From IMG/VR virus record IMGVR_UViG_3300044712_001462, positions 124,001 to 188,000 of that record: DNA of 64,000 nt; one strand, written 5' to 3'. The notes beneath the pieces were generated by a model. The model searched no databases, had not been told where the DNA came from, and was given only the letters and a program-made list of their open reading frames with translations. Shown here one piece after another: positions 12,918 through 63,477 of this stretch; the stretch's first letter is position 1; the number at the start of each line of letters is the position of its first letter. A program made the translations under genes and the position numbers.

Positions 12918-12946
12918 ATTGTGCCGCATTTTGGCTTGTAATTTAG
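12918..12946 (-). promoter_or_regulatory. phage promoter class A (CTAAATT-N16-CACAAT)
   Basis: One of six copies with an identical 16-nt spacer; intergenic, just after a terminator. Confidence 0.7.
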
Positions 12947-12956
12947 TTTGATAGGT

Positions 12957-12986
12957 AAAAAAAAGCCCCATCAAAATGATGAGGCT
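12957..12986 (-). terminator. intrinsic terminator
   Basis: AGCCTCATCA-TTT-TGATGGGGCT followed by a U-tract. Confidence 0.85.
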
Positions 12987-13006
12987 ATAGTCGTTATCCG
13001 AGATCG

Positions 13007-13198
13007 TTACTTCAGGATCTCACGCAAACTGTCTAGAGTCTGTTCAAGCTTCTCTTGTTCCGCAGTCACTTGCGCTTTCTGCTGATCCACGGCACTGGCT
13101 GCACTCGACAGCATTCCAGCCGACAGCATGGCACCCAAGCACAGACCGAGAAGAACGAACGCCGCACGCTCCAACAGGTACACTTTCCACGTCTTCAT
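13007..13198 (-). CDS. small membrane-anchored or exported coiled-coil protein
   Basis: N-terminal hydrophobic helix followed by a QQKAQVTAEQEKLEQTLDSL heptad tail. Confidence 0.6.
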   Translation of the reverse strand: MKTWKVYLLERAAFVLLGLCLGAMLSAGMLSSAASAVDQQKAQVTAEQEKLEQTLDSLREILK

Positions 13199-13213
13199 GT
13201 TAAATCTCTTTCT

Positions 13214-13339
13214 CTATTTGAGTTCCCATCGGGCTTCAACATCGACATCATCGATGACTGTCTTCGCACACAGAGTCACACGACTCGAAGCGCATCCTGC
13301 CAACAACAGACACAACACGATCACAATCCATGTACGCAT
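13214..13339 (-). CDS. small lipoprotein (41 aa, not in the ORF track)
   Basis: MRTWIVIVLCLLLAGC-ASSRVTLCAKTVIDDVDVEARWELK*; canonical LAGC lipobox; GGGGAG SD upstream. Confidence 0.7.
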   Translation of the reverse strand: MRTWIVIVLCLLLAGCASSRVTLCAKTVIDDVDVEARWELK

Positions 13340-13355
13340 TGCTTTGCTCCCCTAG

Positions 13356-13397
13356 AAAAACAAAAACCCCGCTAACAACGTGAAGTCATTAGCGGGG
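13356..13397 (-). terminator. promoter-proximal intrinsic terminator
   Basis: CCCCGCTAA...TTAGCGGGG followed by TTTTTGTTTTT, about 35-75 nt after the predicted start site of promoter 13439-13467. Confidence 0.8.
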
Positions 13398-13438
13398 CTC
13401 GATACGAAGACTACATACTAAGAGGCTAGTCCTCGTGT

Positions 13439-13467
13439 ATTATGCCCGAAATCCGGCCTGAATTTAG
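13439..13467 (-). promoter_or_regulatory. phage promoter class A (CTAAATT-N16-CATAAT)
   Basis: Reverse complement CTAAATT CAGGCCGGATTTCGGG CATAAT. Confidence 0.75.
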
Positions 13468-13555
13468 GGTAGCAAGAGATACAGACATGCCGACAGTACG
13501 TCGGACAGAAAGCAGATCAACCCAATCCCCGCCGCAACGTGTAACAGCTTCATGA

Positions 13556-14137: not shown

Positions 14138-14160
14138 AAAAGGTAACCAGGTGGTCACGT

Positions 14161-14189
14161 ATTATGCCGCTAGGGAGCCCGGAATTTAG
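14161..14189 (-). promoter_or_regulatory. phage promoter class A
   Basis: Reverse complement CTAAATT CCGGGCTCCCTAGCGG CATAAT; the -35-like box overlaps the upstream stop codon. Confidence 0.75.
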
Positions 14190-14713
14190 CTGGCGCGAGA
14201 GAGCTCATTCGCCTGCAACACACCCGTCTTCCTCGTTGCCACAGTAATGTGGAACTTGAACTCATTGTCTTTAGGAAGCGGCGTGAGCCCATAGCTTTTT
14301 CTTAGCTGTTGGAGCTCAGGCGAATTCACTTCAATAAACCAGACGCGAGAGATACCGGGCCACCCGGCCGGTTTAACCGACCGGAGTGGACCCAGTGTAT
14401 ACCTGAAGACCTGACCCCGTTCTTTGACTTTGTCAGGTCCGCCGATCTGGTCAAGATCTTCGGGCCGCAGCACAGAAATATGTGCATTGAACCCCGGCGG
14501 AAGTTCGGCTCCCGGTTCATGAAGCGCGGCGAACGCTCCACGTACAAGAGCGTTGGGGACTGATAGCAGGCCCCAACCGGACTGGGAGATGAACAATCGA
14601 CCTCCTAAGCTGTACGACAGCTCAGGCGTATCTGCCGCCCGTTTTACGGCGTACCTGCCGAGCAGTTCGGGCAACTGCAGATCGTAACTGTCTGTTATCG
14701 ATATCAGAGACAT
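14186..14713 (-). CDS. 2H phosphoesterase (LigT/Acb1-like superfamily)
   Basis: Two HxS/T motifs, AHISV and FHITV, about 76 aa apart in a 175-aa protein. Confidence 0.75.
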   Translation of the reverse strand: MSLISITDSYDLQLPELLGRYAVKRAADTPELSYSLGGRLFISQSGWGLLSVPNALVRGAFAALHEPGAELPPGFNAHISVLRPEDLDQIGGPDKVKERGQVFRYTLGPLRSVKPAGWPGISRVWFIEVNSPELQQLRKSYGLTPLPKDNEFKFHITVATRKTGVLQANELSRAS

Positions 14714-14716
14714 AAA

Positions 14717-14909: not shown

Positions 14910-15887
14910 TCAAACGGCTACGGCCTGATCCGAGAACTCTGCAATTGCTTCCTGCCAGGTGGGCATCTCAATCGGAGTCAGGGCTTCCAACTTCTCGATC
15001 GAGAGGGGTGTGGAGTGCACAATCTCAGCAGGCGAATCCCCCATCAGCTGAGCGATCTCCTTGTGCGGAGCGGGTTCGAAAACACGCCCCTGCCAATGAA
15101 TCGCGTTTCGGAGCCGGTATGCAAAGTCAAAGGGCGTGGTCACACCCGAGTTTGCCACATGGTACAGGCCCTGAGGTACCGTCTTCCGGTTCTCAGCCAG
15201 CCAAATGATGACCTTAGCCAGATGCGGCACAAAGCACGGAGTAATCTTCAGATCGTTCGCCAACAAGTGCGAAGGCATTTGTGACGTTCTAGGAGGAGAC
15301 AGAACCTGCTGAGTCAGATCCGTCCGCCACTGACGGTGCTCTGAATACGGAGAAAACAGATGGCCGCATCGGAGAACCCAGTACGAGAAGCCATCGAGCT
15401 GACCCGTCTGGCCCAAACGCATGACTGCGTGCTCGGAATAGGACATGGCAGAGGCCAGGAAGTTGGGAGGGGCCACAGGATCGGTCTCTGTGTACAGATG
15501 AGATGAGGGCTGCATCCCCATCCCAAATACCGAGTGGCACGATAGATGAATTAGTGGGATCTTGAGGAAGGCACCAAGCTTGGCCAGGTTATCTGCCCCC
15601 CGGACAAGCGTATTCCACGTTTGTTCCCTGTTTCGGGCGGCTGCCCTCCAGTCTGCAACTCCCGCGGTGTTAACAATGACGTCTGGCTTCAACAGCTCAA
15701 GCTGCTCGCGGCAAGCCTGAAAATTCGAAACATCAAGCATCTCTCTGGTTTTAACAACGTAATTCCTGACCCCTCCTCCATTCTGTGCATCAAGTTCTCG
15801 TACAATCGCTGATCCTAATTGTCCCGTCGTCCCGGTAATCAGTATCTGGGCGCGTCTTCTCGATACCATATCTTCCCCTATTGACAA
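14910..15887 (-). CDS. rmlD: RmlD (dTDP-4-dehydrorhamnose reductase)-like extended SDR, catalytic motif degenerate
   Basis: ILITGTTGQLG, KPDVIVNTAG, YTETD, GLYHVAN and MPTWQEAI. The canonical STDYVF and YxxxK positions read SCHSVF and LASAM. Confidence 0.75.
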   Translation of the reverse strand: MSIGEDMVSRRRAQILITGTTGQLGSAIVRELDAQNGGGVRNYVVKTREMLDVSNFQACREQLELLKPDVIVNTAGVADWRAAARNREQTWNTLVRGADNLAKLGAFLKIPLIHLSCHSVFGMGMQPSSHLYTETDPVAPPNFLASAMSYSEHAVMRLGQTGQLDGFSYWVLRCGHLFSPYSEHRQWRTDLTQQVLSPPRTSQMPSHLLANDLKITPCFVPHLAKVIIWLAENRKTVPQGLYHVANSGVTTPFDFAYRLRNAIHWQGRVFEPAPHKEIAQLMGDSPAEIVHSTPLSIEKLEALTPIEMPTWQEAIAEFSDQAVAV

Positions 15888-17497: not shown

Positions 17498-17506
17498 GAG
17501 ATACCG

Positions 17507-17548
17507 AGAAAGAAAAAGAGGACACAGGTTTTACGCTGTATCCTCTTT
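17507..17548 (-). terminator. promoter-proximal intrinsic terminator
   Basis: AAAGAGGATACAG...CTGTGTCCTCTTT followed by TTCTTTCT, just downstream of promoter 17575-17603. Confidence 0.75.
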
Positions 17549-17574
17549 GGGCCGAGGGACTATTCGGTCCACGT

Positions 17575-17603
17575 ATTATGCCGCCATTTTCAACGAAATT
17601 TAG
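17575..17603 (-). promoter_or_regulatory. phage promoter class A
   Basis: Reverse complement CTAAATT TCGTTGAAAATGGCGG CATAAT. Confidence 0.75.
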
Positions 17604-18787
17604 GCAGCTTCAGCCGTCTCAGTCTCCTTGTCAGAGGGCTCCTCAGCCGGGACCGGGTCAGGTCGCAACACCTTTCTTCGGGTCGTCTCAGAAGACATAC
17701 CCATGATCGAGGTGAACAATTCATCCATGCGTCCCAATACGAACTCACGCTGCGTCCCATCTTTCCGCAAACGATTCGCTACCGTCGTAGCATCCTCGCC
17801 TACCCCTTTCAGAACGTTGTGGAGCTCTTCGAACTGGGCCCCAATCTGGCGACCATTCAAGATGCCAAACGGCTCAATCTTCGACTTGTACTCCTCAATC
17901 GCTTTGAAGACGCGCTCAATCACGCCATCCTTAAACGACTTTTGCGTACCATCCTGCCAGCCGCGGATCGAAGACACCATCTGCTGCAAACCCATCGCCA
18001 TCGCTTCTTCGATCAACTCCGCCTGCTTCTCAGCGACTTCGGTAAATTGCGCATTCAGTCGCGCCTGTTGTCGCCGGTATTCAGCCGGGTTCACCGCCTT
18101 CAAATACTCCGGCAACTCGAAGTTGTAGGTCTCAAAGCCCACGCCGATCTCCTGGTGGAGCCGTTCAGACGTCGGGTAATCCGACTCGTCATGCAACTCT
18201 CGGAGACGCTCCCGACACGTCGCCATGACTTCTGACCAGTTATTAGCCAGCTCATCAATAGCCTGCCGGAAGTCTGAGATCAGATCGTTGATCTCATCCA
18301 GGAACACACGCACTTCCTCATTCTGATCCTGTTCGGTCTCCCCGCGGACACCAAACAAGCGCACCCCATCTTCGGGGTACTTGAGGGTTTTCGATTGCCA
18401 GTACTTGATGAGCTTGGCCTTGGCCACCTGAACCGCGTGAATCGAAGGATGCTTCGCATACAACACTTTAGTAAAGCGGAGATGCGAGGGATCGCAGTCC
18501 ACGCTGCCAGCCAGCTTATGCGCTGCATCACCCTTAATCTTCCGGCTCTTACTCAGGTCATTGAACTTCAACCGGAAAGCTCGGGCGACTGCCTTAATGG
18601 TCTGCCCAGCTTCACGATAGCGCTCACGCTGTACCGCACGATCTTCTGCTGGAGGCAGATCCGCCAGCATCTTATCCACCTGCTCTTTGGTCAGGTGCTT
18701 CGTTGTCGTCTTCTTCTTTTTCTTCGACGACTTCTTCCCCACGTGCTGCTTAAGCTTCTGTAACAATTCAGGAGAGATACTTGCCAT
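17600..18787 (-). CDS. helical coiled-coil protein, DUF3150-like, partner of the AAA ATPase
   Basis: YWQSKTLKYPEDGVRLF...RERLRELHDESDYP motif; coupled to the ATPase through TAATG. Confidence 0.55.
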   Translation of the reverse strand: MASISPELLQKLKQHVGKKSSKKKKKTTTKHLTKEQVDKMLADLPPAEDRAVQRERYREAGQTIKAVARAFRLKFNDLSKSRKIKGDAAHKLAGSVDCDPSHLRFTKVLYAKHPSIHAVQVAKAKLIKYWQSKTLKYPEDGVRLFGVRGETEQDQNEEVRVFLDEINDLISDFRQAIDELANNWSEVMATCRERLRELHDESDYPTSERLHQEIGVGFETYNFELPEYLKAVNPAEYRRQQARLNAQFTEVAEKQAELIEEAMAMGLQQMVSSIRGWQDGTQKSFKDGVIERVFKAIEEYKSKIEPFGILNGRQIGAQFEELHNVLKGVGEDATTVANRLRKDGTQREFVLGRMDELFTSIMGMSSETTRRKVLRPDPVPAEEPSDKETETAEAA

Positions 18788-21700
18788 TAGTTAACATTGG
18801 GTCGAACTACCGACCGCCTCTTACCTCCGCCAGTGATGTCTGACACGCTGACCACTTGTTTCGCTCCTACATCGTAAAGCCCCGGAGCTGAGGCGTTCAA
18901 ACATCGTCCAGAGGCCCAGGCTCGCAGATCCTGCAGTTTGGTATCTGCCATTCGAGTGACAGGTACCACCTGCTTCGCAGCTTCGTCCAGAGAAACCTCA
19001 CGAATTGCCGCTAGGCGACAGCACGCCTTAATTTCAGCACCCGTCCAGCCCTCACTCAGCGTAAGGAGACTGTGCTTCACCTTGTCTGTCCGCGACTCCG
19101 CATGGCCATACAGATGCAAGTAGATCTGCCAAATAGCCAGGCGCTCTTCCTCTGTGGGAACATCCACAAAGAACACCGCATCAAAACGCTCCGCCCGAGA
19201 GAATTCTGGTGGGAGCATCGAGATGTTGTTGCAATTATGAACCACAACCCCAGACGCCATAAACGAGTGATGGGGCTCCTCAATAACCACATCGTAAACA
19301 GTCTGCTCACCAAGCGGAGAGGGTTCAACAGACACCACACTGACCCACTTCTGAGACCAAATACGTCGAACCTGCTCCAGCTCGTCTGCAATTTCGCGAG
19401 CCGCAGACTCGGACATCTTGGCAACATAGTGATCTACAATCACCTGCCACAACTCCGCCGTATCCGCCGATATTAGCGGAGTGTACTGCCTGTAGTTTGG
19501 CAACACCGATGTATAGCGACCAGCCGCTTTTAAAATAATCTCCAAACAATCATGCATTCCCGGAACACTCCGAACTCCATCTCCGTTAACCTCCTTAGGC
19601 CTACATATCCGACTTTTCTTGTCCGGGTGCTGAAACGGAATGAGCTGTGCAAACCGATGACAAGACTCCGAATCGCGGATACTCAGCTTAGTTACATCCT
19701 TGCGAGGAAGCTTTCGCGAAATCGTTGCAACAGAACCTTGAATATCAAATCTCGTTAAGAGAAGTCGAAGCTGGTCGATCATGACTGGGCTAGTTACCGC
19801 AATCTCAATTCGCCCACGTTTACTGATATAGCCCTCGGCGTCAAAAAGACCCGCTATAAAGGACAACACCACATCCTTGTCCGGAGATGCCATTACATCT
19901 TGAGGTATTTCTCGCACACATTGCAGGCATAAGATGTCTGGAAAATACTGCTCAAACCAATCTAACAGAAGACGACGATCCAGATAGATGTAGTACGACT
20001 GTGCTTTTGGACGCTTATCAATAACCTTTGGCTCTACTCCAAACAAACTACGAATCAGCGAGCATAGGTGCTGAGTCAGACCTGCGCTAAACTCAGATAA
20101 TTGAAGCCGATGGGCCTTCCTGTTTAAAAGCTTACCTTTACCCCCGTCCCCGCAGCAAAATCCAAGAAAATACGCCAATTCTGCTGTTAAGTACTCTGGT
20201 TGTTTAACAGGTTTCTGTCGGGATCGTGCTGGTAACGGCAGATACCGTTTTGCGGGTTTTGATCCCACTGGAGCTTTAGCTTTAGAAAGCAATAGATCAT
20301 CAGCAGTAAGATGCTTCGCTTCTTTCTCAGCTATTTTACCGTTTTGAAAGACAAAGAATCTGTGATCAGGCGTTGCATCGATGAACCCAGCTGACGTACG
20401 TATGCGTAGCATGTCGCGAATACCGCGGCTGTACACTAGCCCGGAGCCAGATACCCACTGACCAGTCTCGTCATCCACACTCAGGAACGTTTCACGTTGG
20501 CCTACAAGCGACTCAAGTTTACAGATACGCCCGTCCGCCAACTCAACAAGTGTTCCACCGGCCAAACACGTACCGATGAAAAACACATCTGACGTATGGT
20601 CGTTCAACCAACTGAGTAACTTACCAAAAATGCGATCACCAGAGCCGCCATCTGTCATCGATGATGACTGACCTGCTCCGGACAGTGCTTTCTCGATTTC
20701 CACTTGTGTTACGAGATACCCGTTTCCGGTACCTCTCTTACGGTTACCCGTAAGGTCAGACTATTTCATCCTGTCGCTGCGACAGGGCCCCCGTTTCGAG
20801 ATCACTTGATCTCTACTTCCTTTCGGAATAGTCGTTGAACGTTTCAGTCATAGACTGACTTCGCTGCAGATAATCCAGGCTAGTGGACTTCCCTGCAATT
20901 AGAGGGCTTTGCATCGGCATGTCACCACGCCGAGGGACTAACGTTAATCCACAAAGAGAATGCACGGCTGCATAGCATCAGCCAGCTTCAGAGCCATCCG
21001 GACATTGGCATCCGTTTCACCCTGAAACTTCGATCTGAGTGCGCCCATATCCATCATGAGCACTTTGCGCTGGGTCTCATTACCCATCGCCTTAATGATC
21101 GCACTCTTACCGGCACCAGGCACACCAAGGAGCAGCATACCACGAGGCTGAAGCAGAGGATTATCTCGTCGCCGAAGTAGCTGCTTCGAGAACTCCTTGA
21201 ATTGCTGCAACCCACCCAACTGCGCATAAGTGTCTGTGCCTTTGTAGATCTCCAGTACACCGCGCTTCTTGAGATCCTGAGCCTTCAGGTCCCAGATCTC
21301 ATTGGGATCGAGCTTACCGGTCTTCGCCAGAGACAAACTCAGAGCATCCTCGAAACCACGTCGAGACAATCCCGCCGCAGCATCTAAGACCAGTCGTTTG
21401 TCGTCATCCGTTTTAGGTAACTCCGTCTCCGCACAGATGTTCTTAGCGATCGACCAGAGTTGTTCCTTACCTGGCAGCTCGTGCTCCAGGATTACAAAGT
21501 CCTTCTCTAGCTCTCGAGGGATCTCAATCATCGGAGAGAGCACAATGGCGCAGCAGGAGACCTGGCCCTCCGCCTTACAATCCGTTACCGCGTTCTGCAG
21601 AGCCTGCATGATGGGTAGGTTGTGAACCAGCTGCTGGTGATGGAAATTCTTGAGAATCCAGATGACGTGAGTAGCACCCTCGCTACCCTGGGACTCTTGA

Positions 21701-21981
21701 GCCTGCCGAAGGGCCAGAGACATCACAGGCATGTCCTGAACCAACGGGAGAGGCTTCATCTGGTAGTTAGTATTCTTCGAAATGAAATCTCTTAGCGTCT
21801 CAGCTGTATCTCGGGGGCATTTGAGGCCCGCGGCGAAGTCCCACACAATGACCGGCCATTGTCTCTCAGCACATACCGGTACGATCTCTGCGATAGCATC
21901 CCCAAACTCATAAGTCTCAACCCAAAGGCCGGTGAAACCGGCTCGCAAATACTGCCGTACTTGCTCCCCAAGTGCTGGCAC
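18787..21981 (-). CDS. Ycf46-like AAA+ ATPase, join(21981-20947, 20700-18787); ~537 aa after intron and intein removal
   Basis: Walker A GVPGAGKS; Walker B ILFVD|EIEK restored by splicing; sensor-1 FIGT|CNNI restored by intein excision; arginine-finger region PPEFSRAERFD. Confidence 0.9.
19234..20568 (-). mobile_element. intein (445 aa) with LAGLIDADG homing endonuclease
   Basis: N-terminal CLAGGT, block B ATPDHRFF, LAGLIDADG motifs LAYFLGFCCGDG and FIAGLFDAEG, block F TVYDV, C-terminal VVHN followed by +1 Cys. Confidence 0.93.
20701..20946 (-). ncRNA. group I self-splicing intron (246 nt, no ORF)
   Basis: The 5' exon ends in U, paired U.G in P1 (GGAU/GUCC). Core elements P AATTGCAGGGAA, Q ATCTGCAGC, R GTTCAACGACTA, S GAAATAGTCT; terminal G. 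Removal fuses GAT|GAA in frame. Confidence 0.93.
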
Positions 21982-23447: not shown

Positions 23448-23729
23448 TTACACTTTGTATCCGCGTTTCCTCAATTCCGCGTCAGCATGTACCACGCTGC
23501 CAGGGATACTAGTAGAGCGCATGGGCTCAGGGCGCGTCGAGGTTGCCTCAAAAAAACACTGGAGAGCGCGCCTGCTCGTAAAAATCCGTCCACCTATGCG
23601 CAGAGTATCTAACAGAACCCCGCGATAACCGACGGTGGCCCAGCGCCAGACTGTCGAAGAAGATGTTTTCCCAGGTAACGCCTTCGCTGCCTCAGAGAGC
23701 GAAAGCACGTCTTCGTCGTCGAATTTCAA
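23448..23729 (-). CDS. DUF1580-like HTH protein, putative excisionase/recombination directionality factor
   Basis: LSLSEAAKALPG...STVWRWA..G.RGV.L.T.RIGGRIFTSR.AL..FF; overlaps the integrase stop. Confidence 0.75.
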   Translation of the reverse strand: MKFDDEDVLSLSEAAKALPGKTSSSTVWRWATVGYRGVLLDTLRIGGRIFTSRRALQCFFEATSTRPEPMRSTSIPGSVVHADAELRKRGYKV

Positions 23730-24919
23730 CCAAATTCCTCCGCAATTGATCGAGCCAGCTTCAAGTTCTTCTCCGCGTAGATTTCGCTGGTGCGAATATG
23801 CTTGTGCCCTAACAACACCTGGCTGCCTTCTACCCCGTACTTTTCACGTACGCGAGTAGCAAGGTTGTGCCGGAGCTGATTAGGAGCCCACGGAGTTACT
23901 CCTGCTGTGATACACGCTCGCTGAACTGCGCGCCGATAGGAATTGTGGTCATAGTGTGTCCCAGGTGATTTCACACGTCTTATCTTGCGGTTAGAGCCTG
24001 GTTTGTTACCGCACGATACGGGAGTAGTGCGCCGCTTATGTCGGGCGGCTAAACGCTGCTCTTCCGCCTCCCGCGGTGAAAAGCAGTATTCCAAGGGTGA
24101 TCGTTGCAAAAAGCGACGGAGTATTTTCTGCGCCCGTCGCCCTATCGAAATTTCCCTGCGAGCATCTTCCTGGTGTGCCAGCTTGTGATCAGGTGGCACG
24201 TAGAGCCACACGGGATCTTTCATGGAAATATCACACGGCCTGAGAAGACAGATCTCCATCGGCCTCATCCCTGTCCAGTACTGCAAACGAACCATCTGCG
24301 CCACCACTTTGGGCAGGTATGGAATCGTCTGTCTCAAGTCTTTCTCAGGCACCGGCAAAATCTTTTCGGTCTCCCTGGCCTTCGTCAGCCCTTTTCTTAA
24401 CCCTTCGAGGGTATTGAGATGAGCATGCGTATTCTTCTCTACCAGCCCAGCGCTCTCTGCCCACTTGAAGAGCCGCTTCACACAACCGATATACCGGTTC
24501 ACCGTGGAGCGCGAGAGCTTGCCTTCGCGGACTAACTGGGACTGGAGATCTCGGAGAGACCGAGCATCAAAGCGATCAGCTAACGTGTGCCCATAGTATT
24601 TGAGCAGCACATCGTTAGCCGCCTTGATTACCGCTACCTGGGAGGATAGCTTCCCCCTCTTAGACTGGTAACGGATATCCACGAACTCGTCCAGATAGCG
24701 CAGGACGAGGTGGTTGACGAACAGCGGTTGAGACCTCTCTTTGGCCACCACCGCGGACCCAGGATGCACCTGCCTCCCAGCGAGATGGTCGGCAATGAGC
24801 TGCGTACCCTGCGCCTCTGCAGAGCTCTTTTCCCGGCCTAAATAAATTCGCTTTCCAGCGATGTGAACGTAGAACTGACCGGTTGCGGCATGCAGACGAA
24901 CTTGGGGTTTGCGTGGCAT
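23726..24919 (-). CDS. int: tyrosine integrase
   Basis: Arm-binding N-terminus (RLHAATGQFYVHIAGKRIYLG); catalytic TGMRPMEI, NQLRH, LLGH and IYA. ATG at 24919. Confidence 0.92.
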   Translation of the reverse strand: MPRKPQVRLHAATGQFYVHIAGKRIYLGREKSSAEAQGTQLIADHLAGRQVHPGSAVVAKERSQPLFVNHLVLRYLDEFVDIRYQSKRGKLSSQVAVIKAANDVLLKYYGHTLADRFDARSLRDLQSQLVREGKLSRSTVNRYIGCVKRLFKWAESAGLVEKNTHAHLNTLEGLRKGLTKARETEKILPVPEKDLRQTIPYLPKVVAQMVRLQYWTGMRPMEICLLRPCDISMKDPVWLYVPPDHKLAHQEDARREISIGRRAQKILRRFLQRSPLEYCFSPREAEEQRLAARHKRRTTPVSCGNKPGSNRKIRRVKSPGTHYDHNSYRRAVQRACITAGVTPWAPNQLRHNLATRVREKYGVEGSQVLLGHKHIRTSEIYAEKNLKLARSIAEEFG

Positions 24920-24929
24920 GGCTGACCTT

Positions 24930-25207
24930 TTTAGTTGGTAGTCGACTACCAACTAAACTGTAAAGCAATCAGCAGGCCAGCCCTGGCTGTTTTCCTAAGT
25001 TCTTATGCTGTAAGGCTTTACTGAGTGGGCCGTGACAGACTCGAACTGTCGCCCTCTTGCATGTCAAGGAAAAACAGGCGAAATGAGGTCACTCGTAAAA
25101 ACGGCCCAAAACCTTTACAGATAAGCACTTAAGCGTCATTGCATACTTCGCAGCTGGCTTTACTTTTTGCCCATTTTTTCAGCGATAGTTGGTAGTTAGT
25201 TGGTAGT
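24930..25207. other. attP site: tRNA-derived core flanked by arm-type repeats
   Basis: TAGTTGGTAGT at 24932-24942, inverted at 24945-24955, and tandem direct at 25186-25196 and 25197-25207; the core at 25026-25068 lies between them. Confidence 0.8.
25026..25068 (-). pseudogene. 3' half of tRNA-Val(GAC), attP core
   Basis: Reverse complement C-TTGACAT-GCAAG-AGGGC-GACAG TTCGAGT CTGTC-ACGGCCC-A gives the anticodon loop, T-arm and acceptor 3' strand; the 5' half is absent. Confidence 0.85.
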
Positions 25208-34493: not shown

Positions 34494-35576
34494 AGACCGG
34501 CCTTTCTTTACTGTTTGACCTCACCATCCAGCAGCATTACACCATCGTAATGCGCTTTCTGGATCTTCTCGACCAGATACTCCCACACGTCGTCCCACGC
34601 CTCTTCTTCGCAATCACCAATCCCCACAGCTGTCACTGTGAACTCGTATGCCGCCATCACACACTCCTATACTTATCTCGCAACTCGCAGTAGAGCCGCT
34701 CGATCCCTTCGTCCGCCTCAATCCACATCGTTTCATACGGTGCAATGACTTTCTCCGCCGCTTCAATGACTCGCTCCGCAGTCTCTTTCACCGTATCCGC
34801 CCAGGGAACAGACACAGTCTCACTGAAGAAAAGACACCAGTCATCGCCGGTCCACTCACCAGAGCATCCCACATCACAAACCACGCTAAGCGCTAACATG
34901 GAATAACTAGATTTGTCCTCTGCGGTTAAGTCCCATTCACACTCATATGTCGGGTCAACCAGTGTTTTGTGGCCCGATACCCGTACGGTAACAGTCTCGT
35001 CGTTAGCCCCCAGAATCGAATCAATCCCCGTGCAACCTGTCGGCTCCAGGTCCGCATCCTTCCAGCCAAAACTGATTAGATCGAAACACCCAGACAAGCA
35101 CCGCCCGTCGTCGTCATAGCGCTTCAGATTGCGGCCTTCATTCATCTCTCGAAGGGTTATTCGTAACTCATCGATCGCGGCAGCAAGTTCGACCTCCTCC
35201 TGTTCACGGCAATACCAATCCCAGTCTTCGCTAGGACATCTCGCCATTTACTCCTCCTCATCCTCTTCTTCCTGCGCCGGTCTGCGGTTTGCCACGTCTT
35301 CAAACGTGCGCCCATCCGAGTCCTCCCCGCCAAAAAAGCAATAATCAAAGACATGCTCGAGGGCTGCATAAGTCTGGGGGTCCAGCTCCGTCGCATCCTC
35401 GTATTCCTCGAAATACGTGTTTACCAGCAGAACAAAAGCATCGGTAAGCTCCTGTTCTTTGAAGTGGTGCTGTATGGATTGCACCAAACAGTTAAATCTC
35501 GCAACTGGATCTTCTTTCATACCCGTCGCTCCTTTGGCTAGACATTCAGACAGAAATGGCAACAAAGAGAACTCTC

Positions 35577-35590
35577 TAATAGCGATATCA
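35577..35590. promoter_or_regulatory. operator-like motif inside a leader hairpin
   Basis: TAATAGCGATATCA just downstream of promoter 35602; embedded in the inverted repeat at 35571-35596. Confidence 0.55.
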
Positions 35591-35601
35591 GAGAGTCACA
35601 T

Positions 35602-35630
35602 ATTATGACGCAGAAGTGTCGAGAATTAAG
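35602..35630 (-). promoter_or_regulatory. phage promoter class A (CTTAATT-N16-CATAAT)
   Basis: Reverse complement CTTAATT CTCGACACTTCTGCGT CATAAT. Confidence 0.7.
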
Positions 35631-38720: not shown

Positions 38721-39325
38721 TCCAGCACCTTCTCTACGGGTACTAACAGTGTTCGAATCCGTTCCACGAGATCTCGAACAGGTTTTGGATCAGTCTCCCA
38801 GGGCACATGCAGAGTAAGGACTAGCGGGTACCCAAAGGTCGCCGGGATCCTCTCTACTAACTCGGAAGCTCGTCCATATAGCTCTTTACAGGCAGGCATG
38901 TAGACCGCTGCGCCAACCCGAGAAGGTAGGCAACTAGACGAGATATTTCCCTCATAACCTCCCAAGAAGATTGAGCCACCAGCTTCTGACCAGTTAAGGA
39001 CTGTCTGTCGCGTATAGGCGTTGAATGGTGGAATGTACACCCCTGTCTGAAGCTTTAACCTAGACTCGCGCATTCTGTCCGCCGAGACATCTGCTCCCCG
39101 AGTATGGTCGTAGCCATGAACCGACCACCGCTCTGGTTCCTGCAGATCGACACGCGCCGCAGCTCCCGGCTCCAACCAAGCCGGTACTGCGCCGTAAATG
39201 GCTGGTGTGCCTATCAGACCACAAGCACCCCTCCACCAGTCAAAATAACGCAGAGCGCCATCCGATCCCTGTTCCGGCTTGTCTCCCTCTCGTCTCCCTA
39301 CGTCATCAATCCGTAAGACAATCAT
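38711..39325 (-). CDS. NodB/polysaccharide deacetylase-like protein
   Basis: LRIDDVG, SVHGYDH, YIPPFNAY, LTLH. Confidence 0.7.
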   Translation of the reverse strand: MIVLRIDDVGRREGDKPEQGSDGALRYFDWWRGACGLIGTPAIYGAVPAWLEPGAAARVDLQEPERWSVHGYDHTRGADVSADRMRESRLKLQTGVYIPPFNAYTRQTVLNWSEAGGSIFLGGYEGNISSSCLPSRVGAAVYMPACKELYGRASELVERIPATFGYPLVLTLHVPWETDPKPVRDLVERIRTLLVPVEKVLEWL

Positions 39326-58520: not shown

Positions 58521-58548
58521 CGCAACGACAATCAGACACTACGCGGAC

Positions 58549-59502: not shown

Positions 59503-59925
59503 CAGTTGATTAACTGTTCCCAGGCTAGCGCAGAAAGGATTTCGCCGTCAACAGAAGATTGAGATAGCGGTATTAGGGACCACCGCTGAAACAACTGAGG
59601 TCGCGCCAGTCATCGACTCCCCAGGGGGCCTCGGAGTCGTAATATCGGCCGTTGTAGCGAACAAAGCAGTGATAGGCATAATCATCCGTATCTTCGTTCA
59701 CCCCGGTCAGCTCGTCTCCCCAGAACGCCTCCGCCCCGGGTACCAAGCCACAAACCTCCTCAGCAAACCACTCGCAGTCTCCAAAGTTGACACCTGCCGC
59801 AGAGCTGTCAAACAGCTCTTTCCAGAGCTTCACTAAAACATCGATCGCCTCGGTTATCGTCCACGACCTCTCTTTTAAAGCATCAATGCGCTGACGAAAT
59901 GTCAGATAATCGTCGGACACAGTAG

Positions 59926-60498
59926 TCATGCTGCTAATTTCCCTGTCAGACGTCCTAGCTCTCGCTTGACATAGGACATTGGGTCATCAGCTAATCGCTC
60001 AAGACTATTCCAGGGTCGAGGAAACAGAATTGCCTCACCGCCCGCGGAATAAAACTCTTTCACATTCTGCTCATAGTCATCGATTAGCACGGCATCCCGG
60101 TGCGCCAGAAAATGCTTAGGTGGACTGCCGCCCTTCTTGGACCGGGTCATAATCGTCGGGATGTACGAGAAGTGCTTCTCAACCCAATCAATCTTCCCCT
60201 CAACACAGCCCGCAGTGTGCGCTGGTGAAGTAACAAACGCCACGTTCGACTGCCCAACAGACTGGATAGCCAGCTCAATTAGCTGGAACGCCCATGAGTA
60301 GGGCTCCAACGTAGCCCAGAACGTGCGGTCCATTCCGTGCCAGAACTCAGCGGGCGTCATATTCCACAACTTATAGACATCCCACCCTGCAGTCCCTCGG
60401 TTAGCCGGGTTATCATACGGCCACGGTTTTCCATGCAGCTTCATCGCCCCTTGGTTAAAATCCACGATCGTTCCATCCAAATCGACTAGCGCCTTCAC
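59926..60498 (-). CDS. HAD-family 5'(3')-deoxyribonucleotidase (NT5C-like)
   Basis: VDLDGTIVDF, FWATLEP, VTSP, K..WV..HF, LIDD, F.RPWN. Confidence 0.85.
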   Translation of the reverse strand: MKALVDLDGTIVDFNQGAMKLHGKPWPYDNPANRGTAGWDVYKLWNMTPAEFWHGMDRTFWATLEPYSWAFQLIELAIQSVGQSNVAFVTSPAHTAGCVEGKIDWVEKHFSYIPTIMTRSKKGGSPPKHFLAHRDAVLIDDYEQNVKEFYSAGGEAILFPRPWNSLERLADDPMSYVKRELGRLTGKLAA

Positions 60499-61184
60499 TC
60501 AACAACCTCCTCACAGGCCTCTTCTTCGGCCCTTGTAAATTCAGGACTCCACCAACACTCGCCCGGACACGCGGCGATACTAATTCCCGTGTCAACACTC
60601 CCTATCTCAGGAGAATCATCACAACCGCACTGTGTGATCGATCCGTTTGTGCGCACAACCCATTCCGTACAGGCGCACATCCAAGACTCGCGGTCAGCAG
60701 GCTCATCCAATAAGACGTAACCTCTCCCAGCCGGTAGTGGCTCTTGTGTGCCACCCTTAGTAACATCACGGATCGCATCGATCTTTGTAAAGGCATCCAC
60801 CACATCCAGATCGATCGGGTCGTGATACTGATCTTGAGACAGATAGCCGTCGATTACCTTCGCTTTAGTCAGCTGAGCGATCAGAAGAGCCCTGCGCTTG
60901 ATAGAGCCGTTTGTCACGATAAACACAGGATTACCCGTATCCGCAGCGGCAGCCATAGCCTCCACCAGCATCAACTCAAACTGCGGATGTAGCGTAGGCT
61001 CCCCGCCTCCTAGGCAGATGAAGCTGTCGTACTCCGTGGCAATCTCCAGACCTTTTCGGAAAACATCAAGCGACATGTCACTGCCATTGGCTGTTGCAGA
61101 CATACAGCAGTGGGCACAAGACATGTTGCAGCGAGTTGTGAGTTCTAGGTACGTGGGTCGTCCTCCGGACCTGTTACTATCCAC
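60495..61184 (-). CDS. radical SAM protein
   Basis: ELTTRCNMSCAHC (CxxxCxxC), GGGEPTLHP, VTNGS; Cys-rich C-terminus. Confidence 0.85.
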   Translation of the reverse strand: MDSNRSGGRPTYLELTTRCNMSCAHCCMSATANGSDMSLDVFRKGLEIATEYDSFICLGGGEPTLHPQFELMLVEAMAAAADTGNPVFIVTNGSIKRRALLIAQLTKAKVIDGYLSQDQYHDPIDLDVVDAFTKIDAIRDVTKGGTQEPLPAGRGYVLLDEPADRESWMCACTEWVVRTNGSITQCGCDDSPEIGSVDTGISIAACPGECWWSPEFTRAEEEACEEVVE

Positions 61185-61442
61185 GTTCCACCGTCGTGAC
61201 GGATCATTTGTGGATACGGCAACAGCGTCTCTAGGAATCTCTCAAACTGACCTGTCAGCCATTTGTCGTTAGGCCATTCGTCTAACTCACCATCATGCCT
61301 GTGTCCTGCAATACCCGCCACAAACCGACGCAGGTCACCCTTACCAATGTCTAAATAAACACACGCATCATCCGCAGCATACAGATATTCCAAGTACATA
61401 TTTATCGCTACTCGTAAAGCCATAACAGCCTTGTCGGTGACT

Positions 61443-62038
61443 TTATCCCGCGTCATAATCATCCTCCTCGTCATCCTCAATGCCCAGATCGTCGTTGTAG
61501 AGCCATAGCCAGGCTTGGACCCAGGTGCCATCGTCCGCCTCACTAGTACCGGCATCATCATCGACTTCAATCTCGTTTCCATCCCGATAATGACCGTACA
61601 CCTCTTGGGCCGTCTTAACCTCGTGAGGTGTAGCTTGCTGGAACGGTCTGACCTCACGGACTTTCACACCTGGAAATGTTTTAATCATGTCAGCAATGGC
61701 ATCCGCTTCCTGCTGGGTACAACCCTCGATCCAGATCTTATGGCTCACAGGCTTTCATCCTCCTCCGCATATTCAAGACCCATCTCTTCATTGCTCACCC
61801 AGGTCCAGGCCTGCACCCAAACGCCTTCGTCGGATTGGATGGTTCCCGCATCGTCTTCAATCTTCAGATCATAAGCGTCGGCAGCTTCACTCTCGCGGGC
61901 TGCCTTTATATACCGTGGTGTAGCCAGCTGAAACTCTACCGGGTCGTGTACTATGACCCCCGGCATGGACCTCATCGCACTTACAATCCCGTGCGCATCC
62001 TCTTTCGTGCAACCTTCAATCCAGATCTTGTAACTCAC
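61443..62038 (-). repeat. two tandem paralogous acidic genes (61443-61748 and 61745-62038)
   Basis: Both read MS(H/Y)KIWIEGCT...PGV.V....FQ.ATP...DDAGT...D.G.WVQAW.W..N...G.E. Confidence 0.85.
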
Positions 62039-63412
62039 AGGTATCCCTCCACTAACTTTGTCTTACCCAGAACCTTGTCCTGCTGCACTAAGACATCGCA
62101 TAGAGACAATTGACCGGCCAACCAATCCCGGCCAGGCATCTCCGCCGCTGTCACTGCCACATGTCGCAACTCCTCATACAGCGCCTTGTAATCAGGCGGA
62201 GGAACTGGTTTCGCCTGTCTCTCCTCCTCGACGTACTCCATAAACTCCTCAAAAGCTTCGTCCTCATCCCAGTCGTGCTCACTAAAGGGAAAAATCCGCT
62301 GAATAAAGTCTCGCAGATTCGGCAGGGCACAGTTTACCCCGTTTCGCAAATCATCCAGGTCGTCCTGGAAATCCAGGAGATCAGCAACAGCCTGCTCCAA
62401 CAATTTCTTTAACTGAGCTTCAGACAACGCCATTCTATTACGCCCTTTCTTTATGCCCACACAACTGACACTGGATATATGCATTGGTTCCATTAAACAC
62501 CACCAGAGGCATGTCATTTCGGCCTAGTCGCCAAACATGCTTACATGGCGGCCCCTTTGACTCTTGTCCAAGATCAATACCACGAGCCATAGCCAGTCGG
62601 TACTGCTCCGTCAGCCACTCGGCAAACTCTCTCGATCGAATGTCCGTAGGTACCGGACAGCCCTGCTCGTTCAAATACCTGAAAACCGCATCCACCTTAT
62701 ACCAGTCCGTGACAAACTCCCAAGTGTTCTTACCGTCGATCATTTCCACCTCACTTCTCTGCCAGGCAATCACCATTAGTGTTATACGGGTCAAAAGCAC
62801 ACGAGCACTTACAGACAATCGCGCAATCAAAACAAGTAATGCGAAGGTCACATTCCGCGTTTCAATGCTTCAAGGCCTGTTCTGCCCGGTTAGCCCGTGC
62901 GATTAAGCTCTTAATTCTGTCATCCACGGTAGCCGCTGCTTCGTTGGCCATTTTTCGTTATTACCCTTTCGTGAACAGTCATCTTCCCGGTCTTCGTGAC
63001 ATAGACCTGAACCTCTCCGCGGGGTGATTTCAAGCGAATCACCACCCAGCCCTTCTTCTCGTCGGAGCACATGCGAGATACGTCGACAGCGCCGTACTCA
63101 AAGCCGTACTGAGTCTCTTGGTAGTGCATGCTCAAGTCTCACTCGCCTGCTCATAGCCTCGCGAATACAACTCTTCTTTTCCACGGTGATGGCATTCCGC
63201 CCACAGAATATCCACATGCGTGTGATAGTCGCTTCTTGGGTTGTTTGCCGCAAAAGCACTCAGCCAGATCTTCTGTTCGCACTCCTCAACAATCTGCTCG
63301 TCAGTCATCTGAGCCACCTTTTCAATGTACTCTGCCCACGGCTTACCGTAATTGTCTTTGCCCTCAAACCGACTGGCATACTCTCTCGTCTCTACCATTG
63401 GTTAGCTCCCGT

Positions 63413-63443
63413 AAAAAAAAAACGAACACTAAACCTGCCTCGT
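63413..63443 (-). terminator. promoter-proximal terminator-like hairpin
   Basis: ACGAGGCA...TGTTCGT followed by a long U-tract, directly after promoter 63449. Confidence 0.55.
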
Positions 63444-63448
63444 CAAAG

Positions 63449-63477
63449 ATTATGACACGAAAAGTGCCAAAATTGAG
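63449..63477 (-). promoter_or_regulatory. phage promoter class A (CTCAATT-N16-CATAAT)
   Basis: Reverse complement CTCAATT TTGGCACTTTTCGTGT CATAAT. Confidence 0.7.

What the first reader, a model, noticed from the sequence alone, without database searches (positions are those of the whole stretch)
12918..63477. Six-copy non-canonical promoter CT(A/T/C)AATT-N16-CA(T/C)AAT
Seen: copies at 12918, 13439, 14161, 17575, 35602 and 63449, all on the minus strand, all at the head of gene runs, with an invariant 16-nt spacer. The -10 box resembles TATAAT but the upstream box is not TTGACA. Inference: recognised by a phage-encoded sigma factor or activator, or by an uncharacterised Planctomycete sigma factor.
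Basis: partly seen in the sequence, partly recalled or inferred. Interest (0 to 1): 0.65.

Follow-up and report, generated by a model that had tools for sequence, protein, structure and literature searches.

The report
Phage sigma-type promoter cassette
A sharply defined two-box promoter occurs nine times in a 224-kb uncultivated phage genome and is most likely read by the phage's own sigma factor and RNA polymerase; it recurs in other large phages that carry the same sigma family, which matters because giant-phage polymerases are described as sigma-less.

Summary
CT(A/T/C)AATT-N16-CA(T/C)AAT occurs 6 times in the window against 0.01 expected. It occurs 9 times in the whole 224,528-bp virus record, always on the gene strand and always intergenic or overlapping the stop codon of the gene before it. 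No weaker look-alikes exist: the nine sites score 29-35 bits and the next best scores 8.

The conserved stretch is longer than reported: CTAAATT-N12-GcGgCATAATAc.TGA. A hairpin usually begins at about the expected transcription start, a G(G)TTA block often lies 12-17 nt after the -10 box, and a T-run sometimes follows.

The genome encodes a bacterial-type beta-beta' RNA polymerase and a single sigma-70-family protein of 254 aa. A complex model docks sigma domain 2 on the phage beta' helical hairpin. Two other large-phage lineages with this sigma family (about 40% identity) carry the same cassette. Salmonella phage Arash has a sigma with a different region-4 helix and lacks the motif.

The box positions (CTAAA at -35..-31, ATAA at -11..-8) match sigma-28/FliA promoters.

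Best reading: these are promoters of the phage sigma. No RNA data exist, so this is inferred. The host is unknown, and a Planctomycete link has no support.

The parts
12918..12946 (-). Promoter copy 1: CTAAATT-N16-CACAAT. An SD-bearing 70-aa ORF starts 44 nt downstream.
13439..13467 (-). Promoter copy 2: CTAAATT-N16-CATAAT. It is followed by two hairpins, the second a canonical terminator.
14161..14189 (-). Promoter copy 3. The TAA of the upstream box is the stop codon of ORF 14186-14713. The next gene's ATG is 48 nt downstream, at 14113.
17575..17603 (-). Promoter copy 4. The TAA of the box is the stop codon of ORF 17600-18787. A terminator follows.
35602..35630 (-). Promoter copy 5: CTTAATT-N16-CATAAT. 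A 12-bp hairpin begins 5 nt after the -10 box.
63449..63477 (-). Promoter copy 6: CTCAATT-N16-CATAAT. An 88-aa ORF starts 50 nt downstream.
13404..13436 (-). First leader hairpin after copy 2, beginning 3 nt after the -10 box.
   Evidence: leader z-score -3.74
13364..13400 (-). Terminator-like hairpin (16 pairs) with a T-run, about 40-75 nt after copy 2. It would give an RNA of about 80 nt unless read through.
17515..17548 (-). Terminator-like hairpin (13 pairs) with a T-run after copy 4. The next gene starts only about 18-30 nt beyond it.
   Evidence: (z -2.61)
35570..35597 (-). Hairpin followed by a T-rich tail after copy 5. It holds the palindromic ATCGCTAT element, in its 5' arm and loop.
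14143..14158 (-). Short hairpin (6 pairs) starting 3 nt after the -10 box of copy 3. Its 3' arm is the GGTTAC block.
12964..12986 (-). Terminator-like hairpin with a T8 run just upstream of copy 1; it ends the preceding unit.
63484..63520 (-). Hairpin (GGGCCAG...CTGGCCC, 13-nt loop) with a T-rich run just upstream of copy 6. It was read directly from the sequence; the tool's loop limit of 8 misses it.
12901..12905 (-). Third conserved block (GTTAG) 13 nt after the -10 box of copy 1. The equivalent blocks lie at 14144-14148 (copy 3) and 63430-63434 (copy 6).

Best explanation
The nine sites (six in the window) are promoters of one phage-specific class. A sigma-70-family factor encoded by the phage itself (254 aa, genome 59964-60728, minus strand, outside the window) is proposed to recognise them. 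Its region 4 would read the upstream box CTAAATT (about -35 to -29). Its regions 2 and 3 would read G.G.CATAAT (-16 to -7). Transcription would start about 5-8 nt after the -10 box, in or just after the conserved TGA.

The sigma most likely works with the phage's own polymerase. This is a beta-beta' fusion of 1911 aa that contains an intein (116475-122210), plus a beta' C-terminal part of 632 aa (112644-114542). By analogy with Salmonella phage Arash, where the homologous beta, beta' and sigma are abundant in virions, the holoenzyme may be injected with the DNA. It could then start transcription of the ORFan-rich region at 124-202 kb.

Most transcripts would begin with a stable 5' hairpin. Several would meet an intrinsic terminator within 35-115 nt. 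Expression of the genes behind those terminators would then need read-through or antitermination; alternatively, short RNAs are made.

Shown: the motif and its statistics, its positions, the sigma and polymerase genes, and the co-occurrence of motif and sigma family in other phages. Inferred: that this sigma reads it, which polymerase core it uses, the timing of expression, and what the hairpins and terminators do.
For: Motif and position:
- 6 copies in the window against 0.01 expected and 9 in the genome. The score gap is 29 versus 8 bits.
- All copies are on the gene strand and are intergenic or overlap a stop codon.
- SD-bearing starts lie 36-50 nt downstream at four sites.
- The two conserved blocks have no dyad symmetry and flank a non-conserved 12-nt spacer of fixed length, as in sigma-70-family promoters.

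Phage machinery:
- RNA polymerase domains Rpb2_6 (E 3e-48), Rpb1_2 (1e-24) and Rpb1_5 (7e-21) are present.
- There is one sigma gene. Sigma70_r3 scores 30.7 bits against a cut-off of 25.3, with SigB/F/G and FliA/WhiG hits.
- In the sigma family alignment, 73 of 74 members hit region 3 and 30 hit region 4. The family profile hits SigA/SigB/RpoD in PDB at 1e-12.
- The AlphaFold2 model has pLDDT 89. All of its top 50 Foldseek hits are sigma factors, the best being S. aureus SigB.
- Complex test: sigma 15-165 against phage beta' 1499-1911 scored ipSAE 0.63, best of 3 controls 0.00. That mark was reached by 51 of 78 solved pairs and 2 of 108 mismatched pairs. The runs agree in at least 54% of contacts and the partner pLDDT is at least 74. 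The interface joins beta' 1635-1677 to sigma 36-74.

Comparative evidence:
- Relative G003 has four sites of the form AAATT-N12-GCGTCATTAT. Two of them form a back-to-back divergent pair, and ORFs of 93-98 aa run outward from each.
- Sigma-bearing contigs L057/L058 have three tandem CTAAATT-N16-CATAGA sites.
- Sigma-bearing contig L062 has CTAAATT-N16-CATATC with the same stop-codon overlap, GGTTAG block and hairpin plus T-run.
- The sigma region-4 helix (T/S)PGA(I/V)(S/T)QRK is conserved in the family. Arash gp10 has a different helix, and Arash lacks the motif.
- Arash virions contain beta, beta' and sigma (PMC10585845).
Against: - There are no transcript data. No public RNA run holds this phage.
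- The cassette also occurs in a 27-kb phage contig (G001/L047), a 10.9-kb integrase-bearing contig (L046) and a 130-kb marine scaffold (L048). No sigma of this family was seen in the DNA I could read from them. All three are incomplete, but a host factor would explain them more simply.
- Nine promoters cannot serve 286 genes. No copy lies in the 38-136 kb structural region or the 203-224 kb replication region, so other promoter classes or another polymerase must exist.
- Site 201955 heads an operon that ends just before the portal gene, so the class is not purely made of early ORFans.
- The complex score may reflect the model's memory of solved sigma-beta' complexes. It does not show that this pair binds, nor does it exclude binding to the host core.
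- The virion location is known only for the 28%-identical Arash homologue.
Confidence: 0.6

Rival explanations
1. The sites are promoters, but an alternative sigma factor of the host reads them together with host RNA polymerase. The candidate would be a group-3 sigma of the FliA/sigma-28 type, or an uncharacterised host sigma. The phage and other mobile elements of the same host range would have converged on, or exchanged, this cassette.
For: - The positions of CTAAA (-35..-31) and ATAA (-11..-8) equal those of sigma-28 promoters. These are TCTAAAG at -36..-30 and GCCGATAA at -15..-8 in P. aeruginosa fliC, and the E. coli consensus TAAAGTTT-N11-GCCGATAA.
- T at -7 is not kept in the variants CATAGA and CATATC. 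This resembles sigma-28, which reads only A-11.
- The cassette occurs in contigs that share no detectable proteins with this phage apart from one ORF of L049 (which resembles relative G003), and without a visible sigma gene.
Against: - The GC-rich block before the -10 box is GCGGC, not GCCG, so the CGA core of the sigma-28 -10 element is absent.
- The carrier contigs range from 40% to 65% GC and come from soil, sludge, groundwater and sea water. That breadth is hard to reconcile with one host sigma but easy with a mobile phage-borne factor.
- Three independent sigma-bearing phage lineages carry the cassette, whereas Arash, with a different region-4 helix, does not.
- Depending on a flagellar sigma would tie infection to motile cells only.
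Confidence: 0.22
2. Host primary sigma reads the good -10 box (CATAAT), while a phage-encoded activator bound at CTAAATT replaces the -35 contact. This is the mechanism of T4 middle promoters (MotA box plus AsiA sigma appropriation).
For: - The -10 box matches TATAAT at 5 of 6 positions, including A-11 and T-7, in all nine G000 copies.
- The upstream box is unlike TTGACA.
- The sharpness of the class fits a dedicated DNA-binding protein.
Against: - No MotA or AsiA homologue is present.
- None of the six window sites passes the tool's sigma-70 promoter scan.
- The related -10 variants CATAGA and CATATC lose T-7, which primary sigma needs.
- The phage carries its own sigma and its own polymerase, which makes appropriation unnecessary.
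Confidence: 0.08
3. The motif is not a promoter. It would be another kind of DNA or RNA signal at gene ends, such as an operator, a recombination or homing target, or a 3'-end or processing signal linked to the hairpins that follow it.
For: - Three G000 copies and the L062 copy overlap the stop codon of the upstream gene.
- Several copies are followed at once by hairpin plus T-run structures that could equally well end the upstream transcript.
- Integrase or recombinase genes lie near the copies in L046 and L048.
Against: - The two asymmetric blocks are about 23 bp apart centre to centre, and the second is a near-consensus -10 box.
- The orientation always follows the genes, including the divergent pair with ORFs running outward from each copy in G003.
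- SD-bearing genes start 36-50 nt downstream at four sites.
- The spacers are not conserved, so the copies are not a mobile repeat.
- No Rfam family matches.
Confidence: 0.05

Closest known systems
Sigma-28 / FliA / SigD (group 3) promoters: TAAA-N15-GCCGATAA
   Same: - Two boxes with the same register: CTAAA at -35..-31 and ATAA at -11..-8.
- A GC-rich extended -10 block.
- T at -7 is dispensable in the variants.
- The phage sigma is short and lacks region 1.1, like group-3 sigmas, and it has NCBIfam hits to SigB/F/G and FliA/WhiG.
   Different: - The block before the -10 box is GCGGC, one base longer, and lacks the CGA core.
- A T at -7 and an A..TGA block after the -10 box are conserved in this genome.
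- The family profile of the phage sigma scores primary sigmas (1e-12) above FliA (1e-5).
- All family scores are far below the curated cut-offs.
Phage-encoded sigma factors with their own promoter classes (SPO1 gp28 and gp33/34, T4 gp55, sigma factors of RNAP-less jumbo phages)
   Same: A phage-borne sigma redirects a multisubunit polymerase to a small, sharply defined set of phage promoters. This is established knowledge, also summarised in PMC7824862 and PMC13282480.
   Different: - Those sigmas are taken to use the host core, and the surveyed jumbo phages had either a polymerase or a sigma, not both. Here both are encoded, and a model docks the sigma on the phage beta'.
- The sigma gene sits inside a conserved structural/baseplate module.
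Multisubunit RNA polymerases of phiKZ-like and AR9/PBS2-like jumbo phages and their promoters
   Same: - A giant phage encodes beta/beta' homologues.
- A virion-packaged enzyme for early genes is plausible, as seen in the Arash virion proteome.
- The promoter class is small and sharp.
   Different: - Those enzymes have split subunits and no sigma-70-family factor (gp68 or gp226 instead), and their promoters are single short elements.
- Here the enzyme is a bacterial-like beta-beta' fusion with strong Pfam matches, a true sigma-70-family protein and a -35/-10 promoter.
Salmonella phage Arash (OQ632216) and Vibrio phage D69
   Same: - These are the nearest isolated relatives of the polymerase, at about 33% identity.
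- Arash shares sigma, capsid, portal and terminase homologues with this phage.
- Beta, beta' and sigma are found in Arash virions.
   Different: - Arash lacks this motif. Its own recurrent element is tGGTATAAGTAA, 16 copies, with no -35 box.
- Its gp10 region-4 helix differs from that of this sigma family.
- It has a second sigma (gp196) with no homologue here.
Lambdoid promoter-terminator cassettes (pR'-qut-tR'; pL/pR-nut-tL1/tR1)
   Same: A strong promoter is followed within tens of nucleotides by an RNA hairpin and an intrinsic terminator. The genes behind it have no promoter of their own.
   Different: No N-like or Q-like protein, boxA or pause element was identified. The resemblance is purely architectural, and function was not tested.

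Membership tests
Sigma-70-family bipartite (-35/-10) promoter | Two conserved blocks separated by a spacer of fixed length and non-conserved sequence, with the second block containing an A at -11 | tested here: met
   The spacer is exactly 16 nt in all 9 copies and in the copies of G003, L057 and L062. CA at -12/-11 is invariant.
Sigma-70-family bipartite (-35/-10) promoter | Location upstream of genes, on the transcribed strand | tested here: met
   All 9 copies are intergenic or overlap a stop codon, and all are on the gene strand. G003 has a divergent pair with ORFs running outward from each copy.
Sigma-70-family bipartite (-35/-10) promoter | Transcripts start 5-9 nt downstream of the -10 box | not testable with these tools
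   No RNA run holds the phage.
Primary sigma-70 promoter (TTGACA-N17-TATAAT) | At least 9 of 12 matches to the two hexamers at 16-18 nt spacing | tested here: not met
   The tool's scan flags none of the six window sites. The upstream box shares at most 2 of 6 positions with TTGACA.
Sigma-28/FliA promoter | TAAA at the -35 region and ATAA at -11..-8, with 19 nt between them | tested here: met
   TAAA + TT + N12 + GCGG + C + ATAA gives 19 nt between the two, the same as in TAAA-N15-GCCG-ATAA.
Sigma-28/FliA promoter | GCCGATAA -10 element (GCCG directly abutting ATAA) | tested here: not met
   The consensus here is GcGgC-ATAA(T). It has one extra base and no CGA.
Sigma-70-family sigma factor (the phage protein at genome 59964-60728) | Region 3 and a region-4 helix-turn-helix detectable by sequence | tested here: met
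   Sigma70_r3 scores 30.7 bits against a cut-off of 25.3. Region 4 is weak in this protein but is hit by 30 of 74 family members. The profile-to-PDB match spans regions 2.x to 4 of SigA.
Sigma-70-family sigma factor (the phage protein at genome 59964-60728) | Region 2 detectable by sequence | tested here: inconclusive
   PF04542 finds nothing in the genome. The Arash homologue scores 17.5 bits, below the cut-off. The fold nevertheless aligns over the full length to sigma factors.
Sigma-70-family sigma factor (the phage protein at genome 59964-60728) | Three-domain sigma fold | tested here: met
   The model has pLDDT 89.2. The top 50 Foldseek hits are all sigma factors, with about 250 aligned columns. 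TM scores are only about 0.4, which I attribute to differing domain arrangement.
Sigma-70-family sigma factor (the phage protein at genome 59964-60728) | Binds the beta' clamp helices through domain 2 | tested here: met
   This is a model only. ipSAE is 0.63 against 0.00 for the best control; the mark was reached by 51 of 78 solved and 2 of 108 mismatched pairs. The runs agree in at least 54% of contacts and partner pLDDT is at least 74. The score may come from memory of solved complexes.
phiKZ/AR9-type sigma-less jumbo-phage RNAP system | No sigma-70-family protein; split beta/beta' subunits; two polymerase sets | tested here: not met
   A sigma is present, and there is one beta-beta' fusion plus one beta' C-terminal gene.
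Lambda-type antitermination cassette | An N-like or Q-like antiterminator and its RNA or DNA site | not tested
   Only the promoter-hairpin-terminator architecture was seen. No antiterminator protein was searched for.

The most novel reading that the evidence does not exclude
A widespread family of large phages may carry a self-contained transcription initiation system. The sigma family has 1356 clusters at 50% identity, and its gene is embedded in the baseplate/structural module. The system would consist of a true sigma-70-family factor that binds the phage's own bacterial-type beta-beta' polymerase, is delivered with the virion, and reads a conserved, portable cassette.

That cassette has the -35 box CTAAATT, a -10 box CATAAT (CATTAT, CATAGA or CATATC in related phages; CACAAT in two G000 copies), a 5' hairpin with a GGTTA block, and often a terminator. 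The hairpin and terminator would act as a nut-like checkpoint. It would release downstream genes only after a phage antiterminator or a second polymerase appears.

This would be the first sigma-dependent phage multisubunit polymerase with a defined promoter. It would contradict the current statement that jumbo-phage polymerases lack sigma homologues.
Probability: 0.3. Interest if true: 0.8.

Novelty: new variant of a known kind. Interest (0 to 1): 0.6.

Why it matters
Recent surveys and reviews describe two separate strategies in giant phages. One group carries its own sigma-less multisubunit polymerase. The other has no polymerase but carries sigma factors that borrow the host core.

This genome, and apparently a large uncultivated family around it, combines a bacterial-type polymerase, a true sigma-70-family factor and a crisp two-box promoter. 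That combination makes a concrete experiment possible: purify or co-express three phage proteins and test a 60-bp DNA cassette.

If confirmed, it would give:
- a compact orthogonal sigma/promoter pair;
- a way to annotate transcription units in many metagenomic phages by pattern search alone;
- a new case for the evolution of sigma specificity, namely sigma-28-like geometry with a sigma-70-like -10 box.

The promoter-hairpin-terminator layout also points to an unexplored layer of timing control.

Tried and rejected
- **Near-identical phages.** A megablast of 9 kb of the window found only a 66-nt match inside the group I intron region.
- **Close relatives of the 395-aa protein and of the sigma in IMG/VR.** Peptide patterns found none. 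The 74-sequence sigma alignment was too divergent for that tool.
- **Arash.** It has no copy of the motif; its best matrix score is 15. The motif is therefore not a property of every RNAP-plus-sigma phage.
- **G002.** This 73.8-kb relative has no recognisable variant. Most of it corresponds to genome parts that lack the motif in G000 too.
- **Other promoter classes.** Word enrichment and reading of the intergenic regions of the structural module gave no shared promoter.
- **Rfam.** No family covers the leaders, at either the gathering or the E<=1 threshold.
- **Sequencing runs.** No RNA run holds the phage. The DNA contigs of four runs were too fragmented to give polymorphism statistics on the motif.
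- **Host identification.** The RmlD-like gene gave only distant hits.
- **Downstream proteins.** The first genes after the sites have no informative Pfam or PHROG family. Proteins downstream of the cassette in different contigs are unrelated to each other.
- **T7-type polymerase idea.** The stretch TAATACG recalls T7 promoters, but no such polymerase was found and the control search was silent, so this is uninformative.
- **Literature search for the boxes.** Nothing relevant was found.
- **Sigma contigs P0001, P0002, P0004, P0007 and P0011.** The DNA fetched was either short or purely structural, and held no copy. This is uninformative, because G000 also has no copy near its sigma gene.
- **Method notes.** No genetic code other than table 11 was used. 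The search for homologous proteins was not used. The AAA ATPase gene is split by a group I intron; its two parts were searched separately by reference and were not joined.

Full report
**1. The observation**

The pattern CT(A/T/C)AATT-N16-CA(T/C)AAT matches six times in the window. The positions are 12918, 13439, 14161, 17575, 35602 and 63449, all on the minus strand. Dinucleotide-preserving shuffles predict 0.01 matches.

The window is bases 124001-188000 of a single-contig IMG/VR virus record of 224,528 bp. CheckV rates it 100% complete, and its GC content is 52.8%. The whole record holds nine exact copies, all on the minus strand. The three outside the window lie at genome positions 201955, 196180 and 38021.

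A weight matrix limited to the informative columns scores the nine sites at 29-35 bits. The next best position anywhere on either strand scores 8.4, and shuffled genomes peak at 10-22. The class is therefore unusually sharp.

- The consensus is CTAAATT-N12-GcGgCATAATAc.TGA.
- A run of A or T lies in the spacer.
- In five of the nine copies, a G(G)TTA block lies 12-15 nt after the -10 box.

**2. Context**

My own gene calls give 286 genes covering about 90% of the DNA, and nearly all are on the minus strand. The strand of the motif is therefore simply the gene strand.

The informative fact is position. All nine copies lie between genes or overlap only the stop codon of the upstream gene. At 14161, 17575 and genome 196180, the TAA inside CTAAATT is that stop codon.

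At four sites, genes with Shine-Dalgarno sequences start 36-50 nt downstream. Copies 12918, 35602 and 63449 follow a terminator-like hairpin.

The first genes behind the sites have no informative Pfam or PHROG family. Eight of the nine copies lie in the 137-202 kb region, which is rich in small ORFs. No copy lies in the 38-136 kb structural region or the 203-224 kb replication region.

One copy (201955) heads an operon that ends at a hairpin plus T7 run only about 20 nt before the start codon of the portal gene.

**3. What the phage brings**

The genome encodes a 1911-aa beta-beta' fusion interrupted by a LAGLIDADG intein, and a 632-aa beta' C-terminal protein. Both have strong Pfam matches: Rpb2_6 at 3e-48, Rpb1_2 at 1e-24 and Rpb1_5 at 7e-21. 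The nearest isolates are Vibrio phage D69 and Salmonella phage Arash, at about 33% identity.

The genome also encodes exactly one sigma-70-family protein, 254 aa long, at genome 59964-60728 on the minus strand. The evidence for its identity is:
- Sigma70_r3 scores above the Pfam cut-off.
- NCBIfam gives hits to SigB/F/G and FliA/WhiG.
- It is homologous to Arash gp10 (E 1e-13).
- Its family has 1356 clusters, of which I aligned 74. Among those, 73 hit region 3 and 30 hit region 4.
- The family profile matches SigA, SigB and RpoD in PDB at 1e-12.
- The predicted structure has pLDDT 89, and its 50 best Foldseek matches are all sigma factors.

Region 2 is not detectable by sequence. No alpha subunit, MotA, AsiA or T7-type polymerase was found.

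A complex test of sigma 15-165 with phage beta' 1499-1911 passed. The score was 0.63 and the best of three controls 0.00. That mark was reached by 51 of 78 solved pairs and 2 of 108 mismatched pairs. The runs agree in at least 54% of their contacts, and partner pLDDT is at least 74. The contacts join a helical hairpin of beta' (1635-1677) to sigma helices 36-74, which is the canonical sigma2-clamp-helix interface. Solved complexes of this kind exist, so the pass shows likeness rather than binding.

In Arash, the homologous beta, beta' and sigma proteins are abundant in purified virions (PMC10585845). In every large contig I could fetch, the sigma gene sits in the same structural/baseplate gene order as in G000.

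**4. Comparative evidence**

*Relative G003.* This is a 37.9-kb fragment whose proteins are 24-49% identical and syntenic with G000. It carries four sites of the form AAATT-N12-GCGTCATTAT with the same spacing. One lies upstream of the portal region. Two stand back to back on opposite strands about 60 bp apart, and ORFs of 93-98 aa run outward from each.

*Metagenome scan.* I scanned JGI metagenomes for CTAAATT-N12-GCGGCATAATAC. The scan gave nine contigs, six of them distinct. They share no detectable proteins with G000 or Arash; one ORF of L049 resembles relative G003. Five of the six nevertheless show the unrequested G(G)TTA(G/A)C block 12-17 nt after the -10 box. One has a spacer nearly identical to that of window copy 12918. 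These are therefore real cassettes, not chance hits.

*Other sigma-bearing phages.* Two further lineages encode members of the sigma family at about 40% identity, and both carry the cassette within the 10 kb I could fetch on either side of the sigma gene:
- L057/L058 (contigs of 103 and 157 kb, 65% GC) have three tandem CTAAATT-N16-CATAGA sites. Each is followed by a hairpin, and the first hairpin has a T-run.
- L062 (42 kb, 61% GC) has CTAAATT-N16-CATATC. Its TAA is again the upstream stop codon, and GGTTAG and a hairpin plus T-run follow.

*The recognition helix.* The region-4 recognition helix (T/S)PGA(I/V)(S/T)QRK is conserved through the family, which fits the invariant -35 box. Arash gp10 has a different helix, and Arash lacks the motif. 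It uses tGGTATAAGTAA instead, 16 times.

*Evidence on the other side.* The cassette also sits in a 27-kb phage contig, a 10.9-kb integrase-bearing contig and a 130-kb marine scaffold, and I saw no sigma of this family in any of them. All three are incomplete.

**5. The leaders**

At least 16 of the 23 sites examined have a stable hairpin starting 2-6 nt after the -10 box, which is about where the transcript should start.

Three G000 leaders are significantly structured, each with a first hairpin followed by a canonical terminator:
- window 13439: z-score -3.7;
- window 17575: z-score -2.6;
- genome 196180: z-score -4.9.

Copy 35602 has a 12-bp hairpin with a T-rich tail.

The genes behind these terminators start 18-30 nt later and have no room for a promoter of their own. 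Either the terminators are read through, constitutively or after antitermination or a change of polymerase, or the units make short RNAs of about 40-115 nt. No Rfam family matches. This part is inference only.

**6. Comparison with known systems**

Published sigma-28 promoters place TCTAAAG at -36..-30 and GCCGATAA at -15..-8 (PMC12784957). The E. coli consensus is TAAAGTTT-N11-GCCGATAA (PMC2859248).

If the A of CATAAT is numbered -11, the present motif has CTAAA at -35..-31 and ATAA at -11..-8, which is the same register. As with sigma-28, which reads A-11 but does not flip -7, T-7 is not kept in the related variants.

The motif fails the GCCGATAA feature. It also fails the primary sigma-70 test. 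I therefore describe it as working like a group-3 sigma promoter, not as a FliA promoter.

A survey of 224 jumbo phages found a phage-encoded polymerase and phage-encoded sigma factors in different groups: no sigma factor in the phiKZ-like group that encodes a polymerase, and sigma factors in the group that lacks one (PMC7824862). A 2026 review states that jumbo-phage polymerases lack sigma homologues (PMC13282480). The combination seen here, already annotated but not analysed in Arash, is therefore unusual.

**7. Verdict**

I rate the promoter reading at about 0.85.

Among the possible readers of the motif:
- the phage's own sigma, probably on the phage's own polymerase: 0.6;
- a host group-3-type sigma: about 0.2;
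- sigma appropriation by an activator: under 0.1;
- not a promoter at all: about 0.05.

The host is unknown, and nothing supports a Planctomycete. The source is a rhizosphere metagenome, with near relatives in rhizosphere, activated-sludge and groundwater runs.

Noticed in passing
window 20737-20956 (-), with ORFs 20944-21981 and 18787-20703: A group I intron (Rfam RF00028, 71 bits) splits an AAA+ ATPase gene. The downstream part also carries an intein with a LAGLIDADG endonuclease domain, so one gene hosts two selfish elements. The 66-nt megablast hits to Vibrio and Enterococcus phages fall in this intron region.
   Followed up: partly
window 23433, 35579, 48066, 53806; genome 26651, 38514, 109582, 195394, 211025, 218144 and about 100.2 kb: A second sharp intergenic element is present: the imperfect palindrome TGTTATCGCTATTA, or its reverse complement. 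There are 10-11 copies, in both orientations, each 8-30 nt upstream of a start codon. One copy lies in the hairpin just after promoter copy 35602, spanning its 5' arm and loop. It is probably an operator for a dimeric regulator or an RNA hairpin loop.
   Followed up: partly
genome 116475-122210 (-), outside the window (L010:8475-14210): The phage RNA polymerase is a beta-beta' fusion. A LAGLIDADG intein interrupts it at residues of about 1128-1498, inside the N-terminal part of beta'.
   Followed up: partly
genome about 199125-199160 (-), outside the window: A hairpin plus T7 run sits only about 20 nt before the start codon of the portal gene (196205-199120). Portal expression therefore also seems to need terminator read-through.
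   Followed up: no
window 12896-12988: In an activated-sludge run (X4), one contig matches only this 93-nt block, which holds the terminator plus promoter copy 1. At least 255 unlike letters flank it on each side. This suggests that the promoter cassette moves between phages as a module.
   Followed up: no
window 7300-8800 (genome about 131.4-132.8 kb) and genome about 208.3-208.8 kb: The 17-nt word CAGCAGCTCGCGGAGGC recurs 5-8 times in two distant places. At about 208.3-208.4 kb it lies inside a called gene; the 131-133 kb copies fall outside my gene calls. It may mark paralogous repeat-containing genes.
   Followed up: no
genome ends (1 and 224528): In relatives G002 and G003, the homologues of genes at the two ends of this contig are adjacent. 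The record is therefore contiguous across its ends, being either circularly permuted or cut at an arbitrary point.
   Followed up: partly
Salmonella phage Arash OQ632216 (L028-L031): Arash has its own sharp element, tGGTATAAGTAAagTgTA, 16 copies on the strand of its early/metabolic genes and with no -35 box. It also has five copies of an inverted module of about 140 bp containing GGTTACAACGTTTG, at 26.7, 66.4, 100.2, 138.5 and 173.3 kb. Neither was mentioned under 'promoter' in the paper, which has no occurrences of that word.
   Followed up: partly
window 14910-15887, 37216-38220, 39322-40272 (-); 23726-24952 (-); 1983-2054 (-): The window holds an RmlD-like reductase and two family-4 glycosyltransferases (sugar-modification genes). 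It also holds a tyrosine-recombinase (integrase-family) gene and the only tRNA of the genome, tRNA-Thr(TGT).
   Followed up: no
window 13330-13438, 17505-17574; genome 196065-196179: Three promoter-to-terminator units would give RNAs of about 80, 65 and 115 nt, each with two hairpins. These are candidate phage small RNAs that share a terminator with the upstream gene, in the manner of 3'-UTR sRNAs. They show no mutual sequence similarity and no Rfam match.
   Followed up: partly
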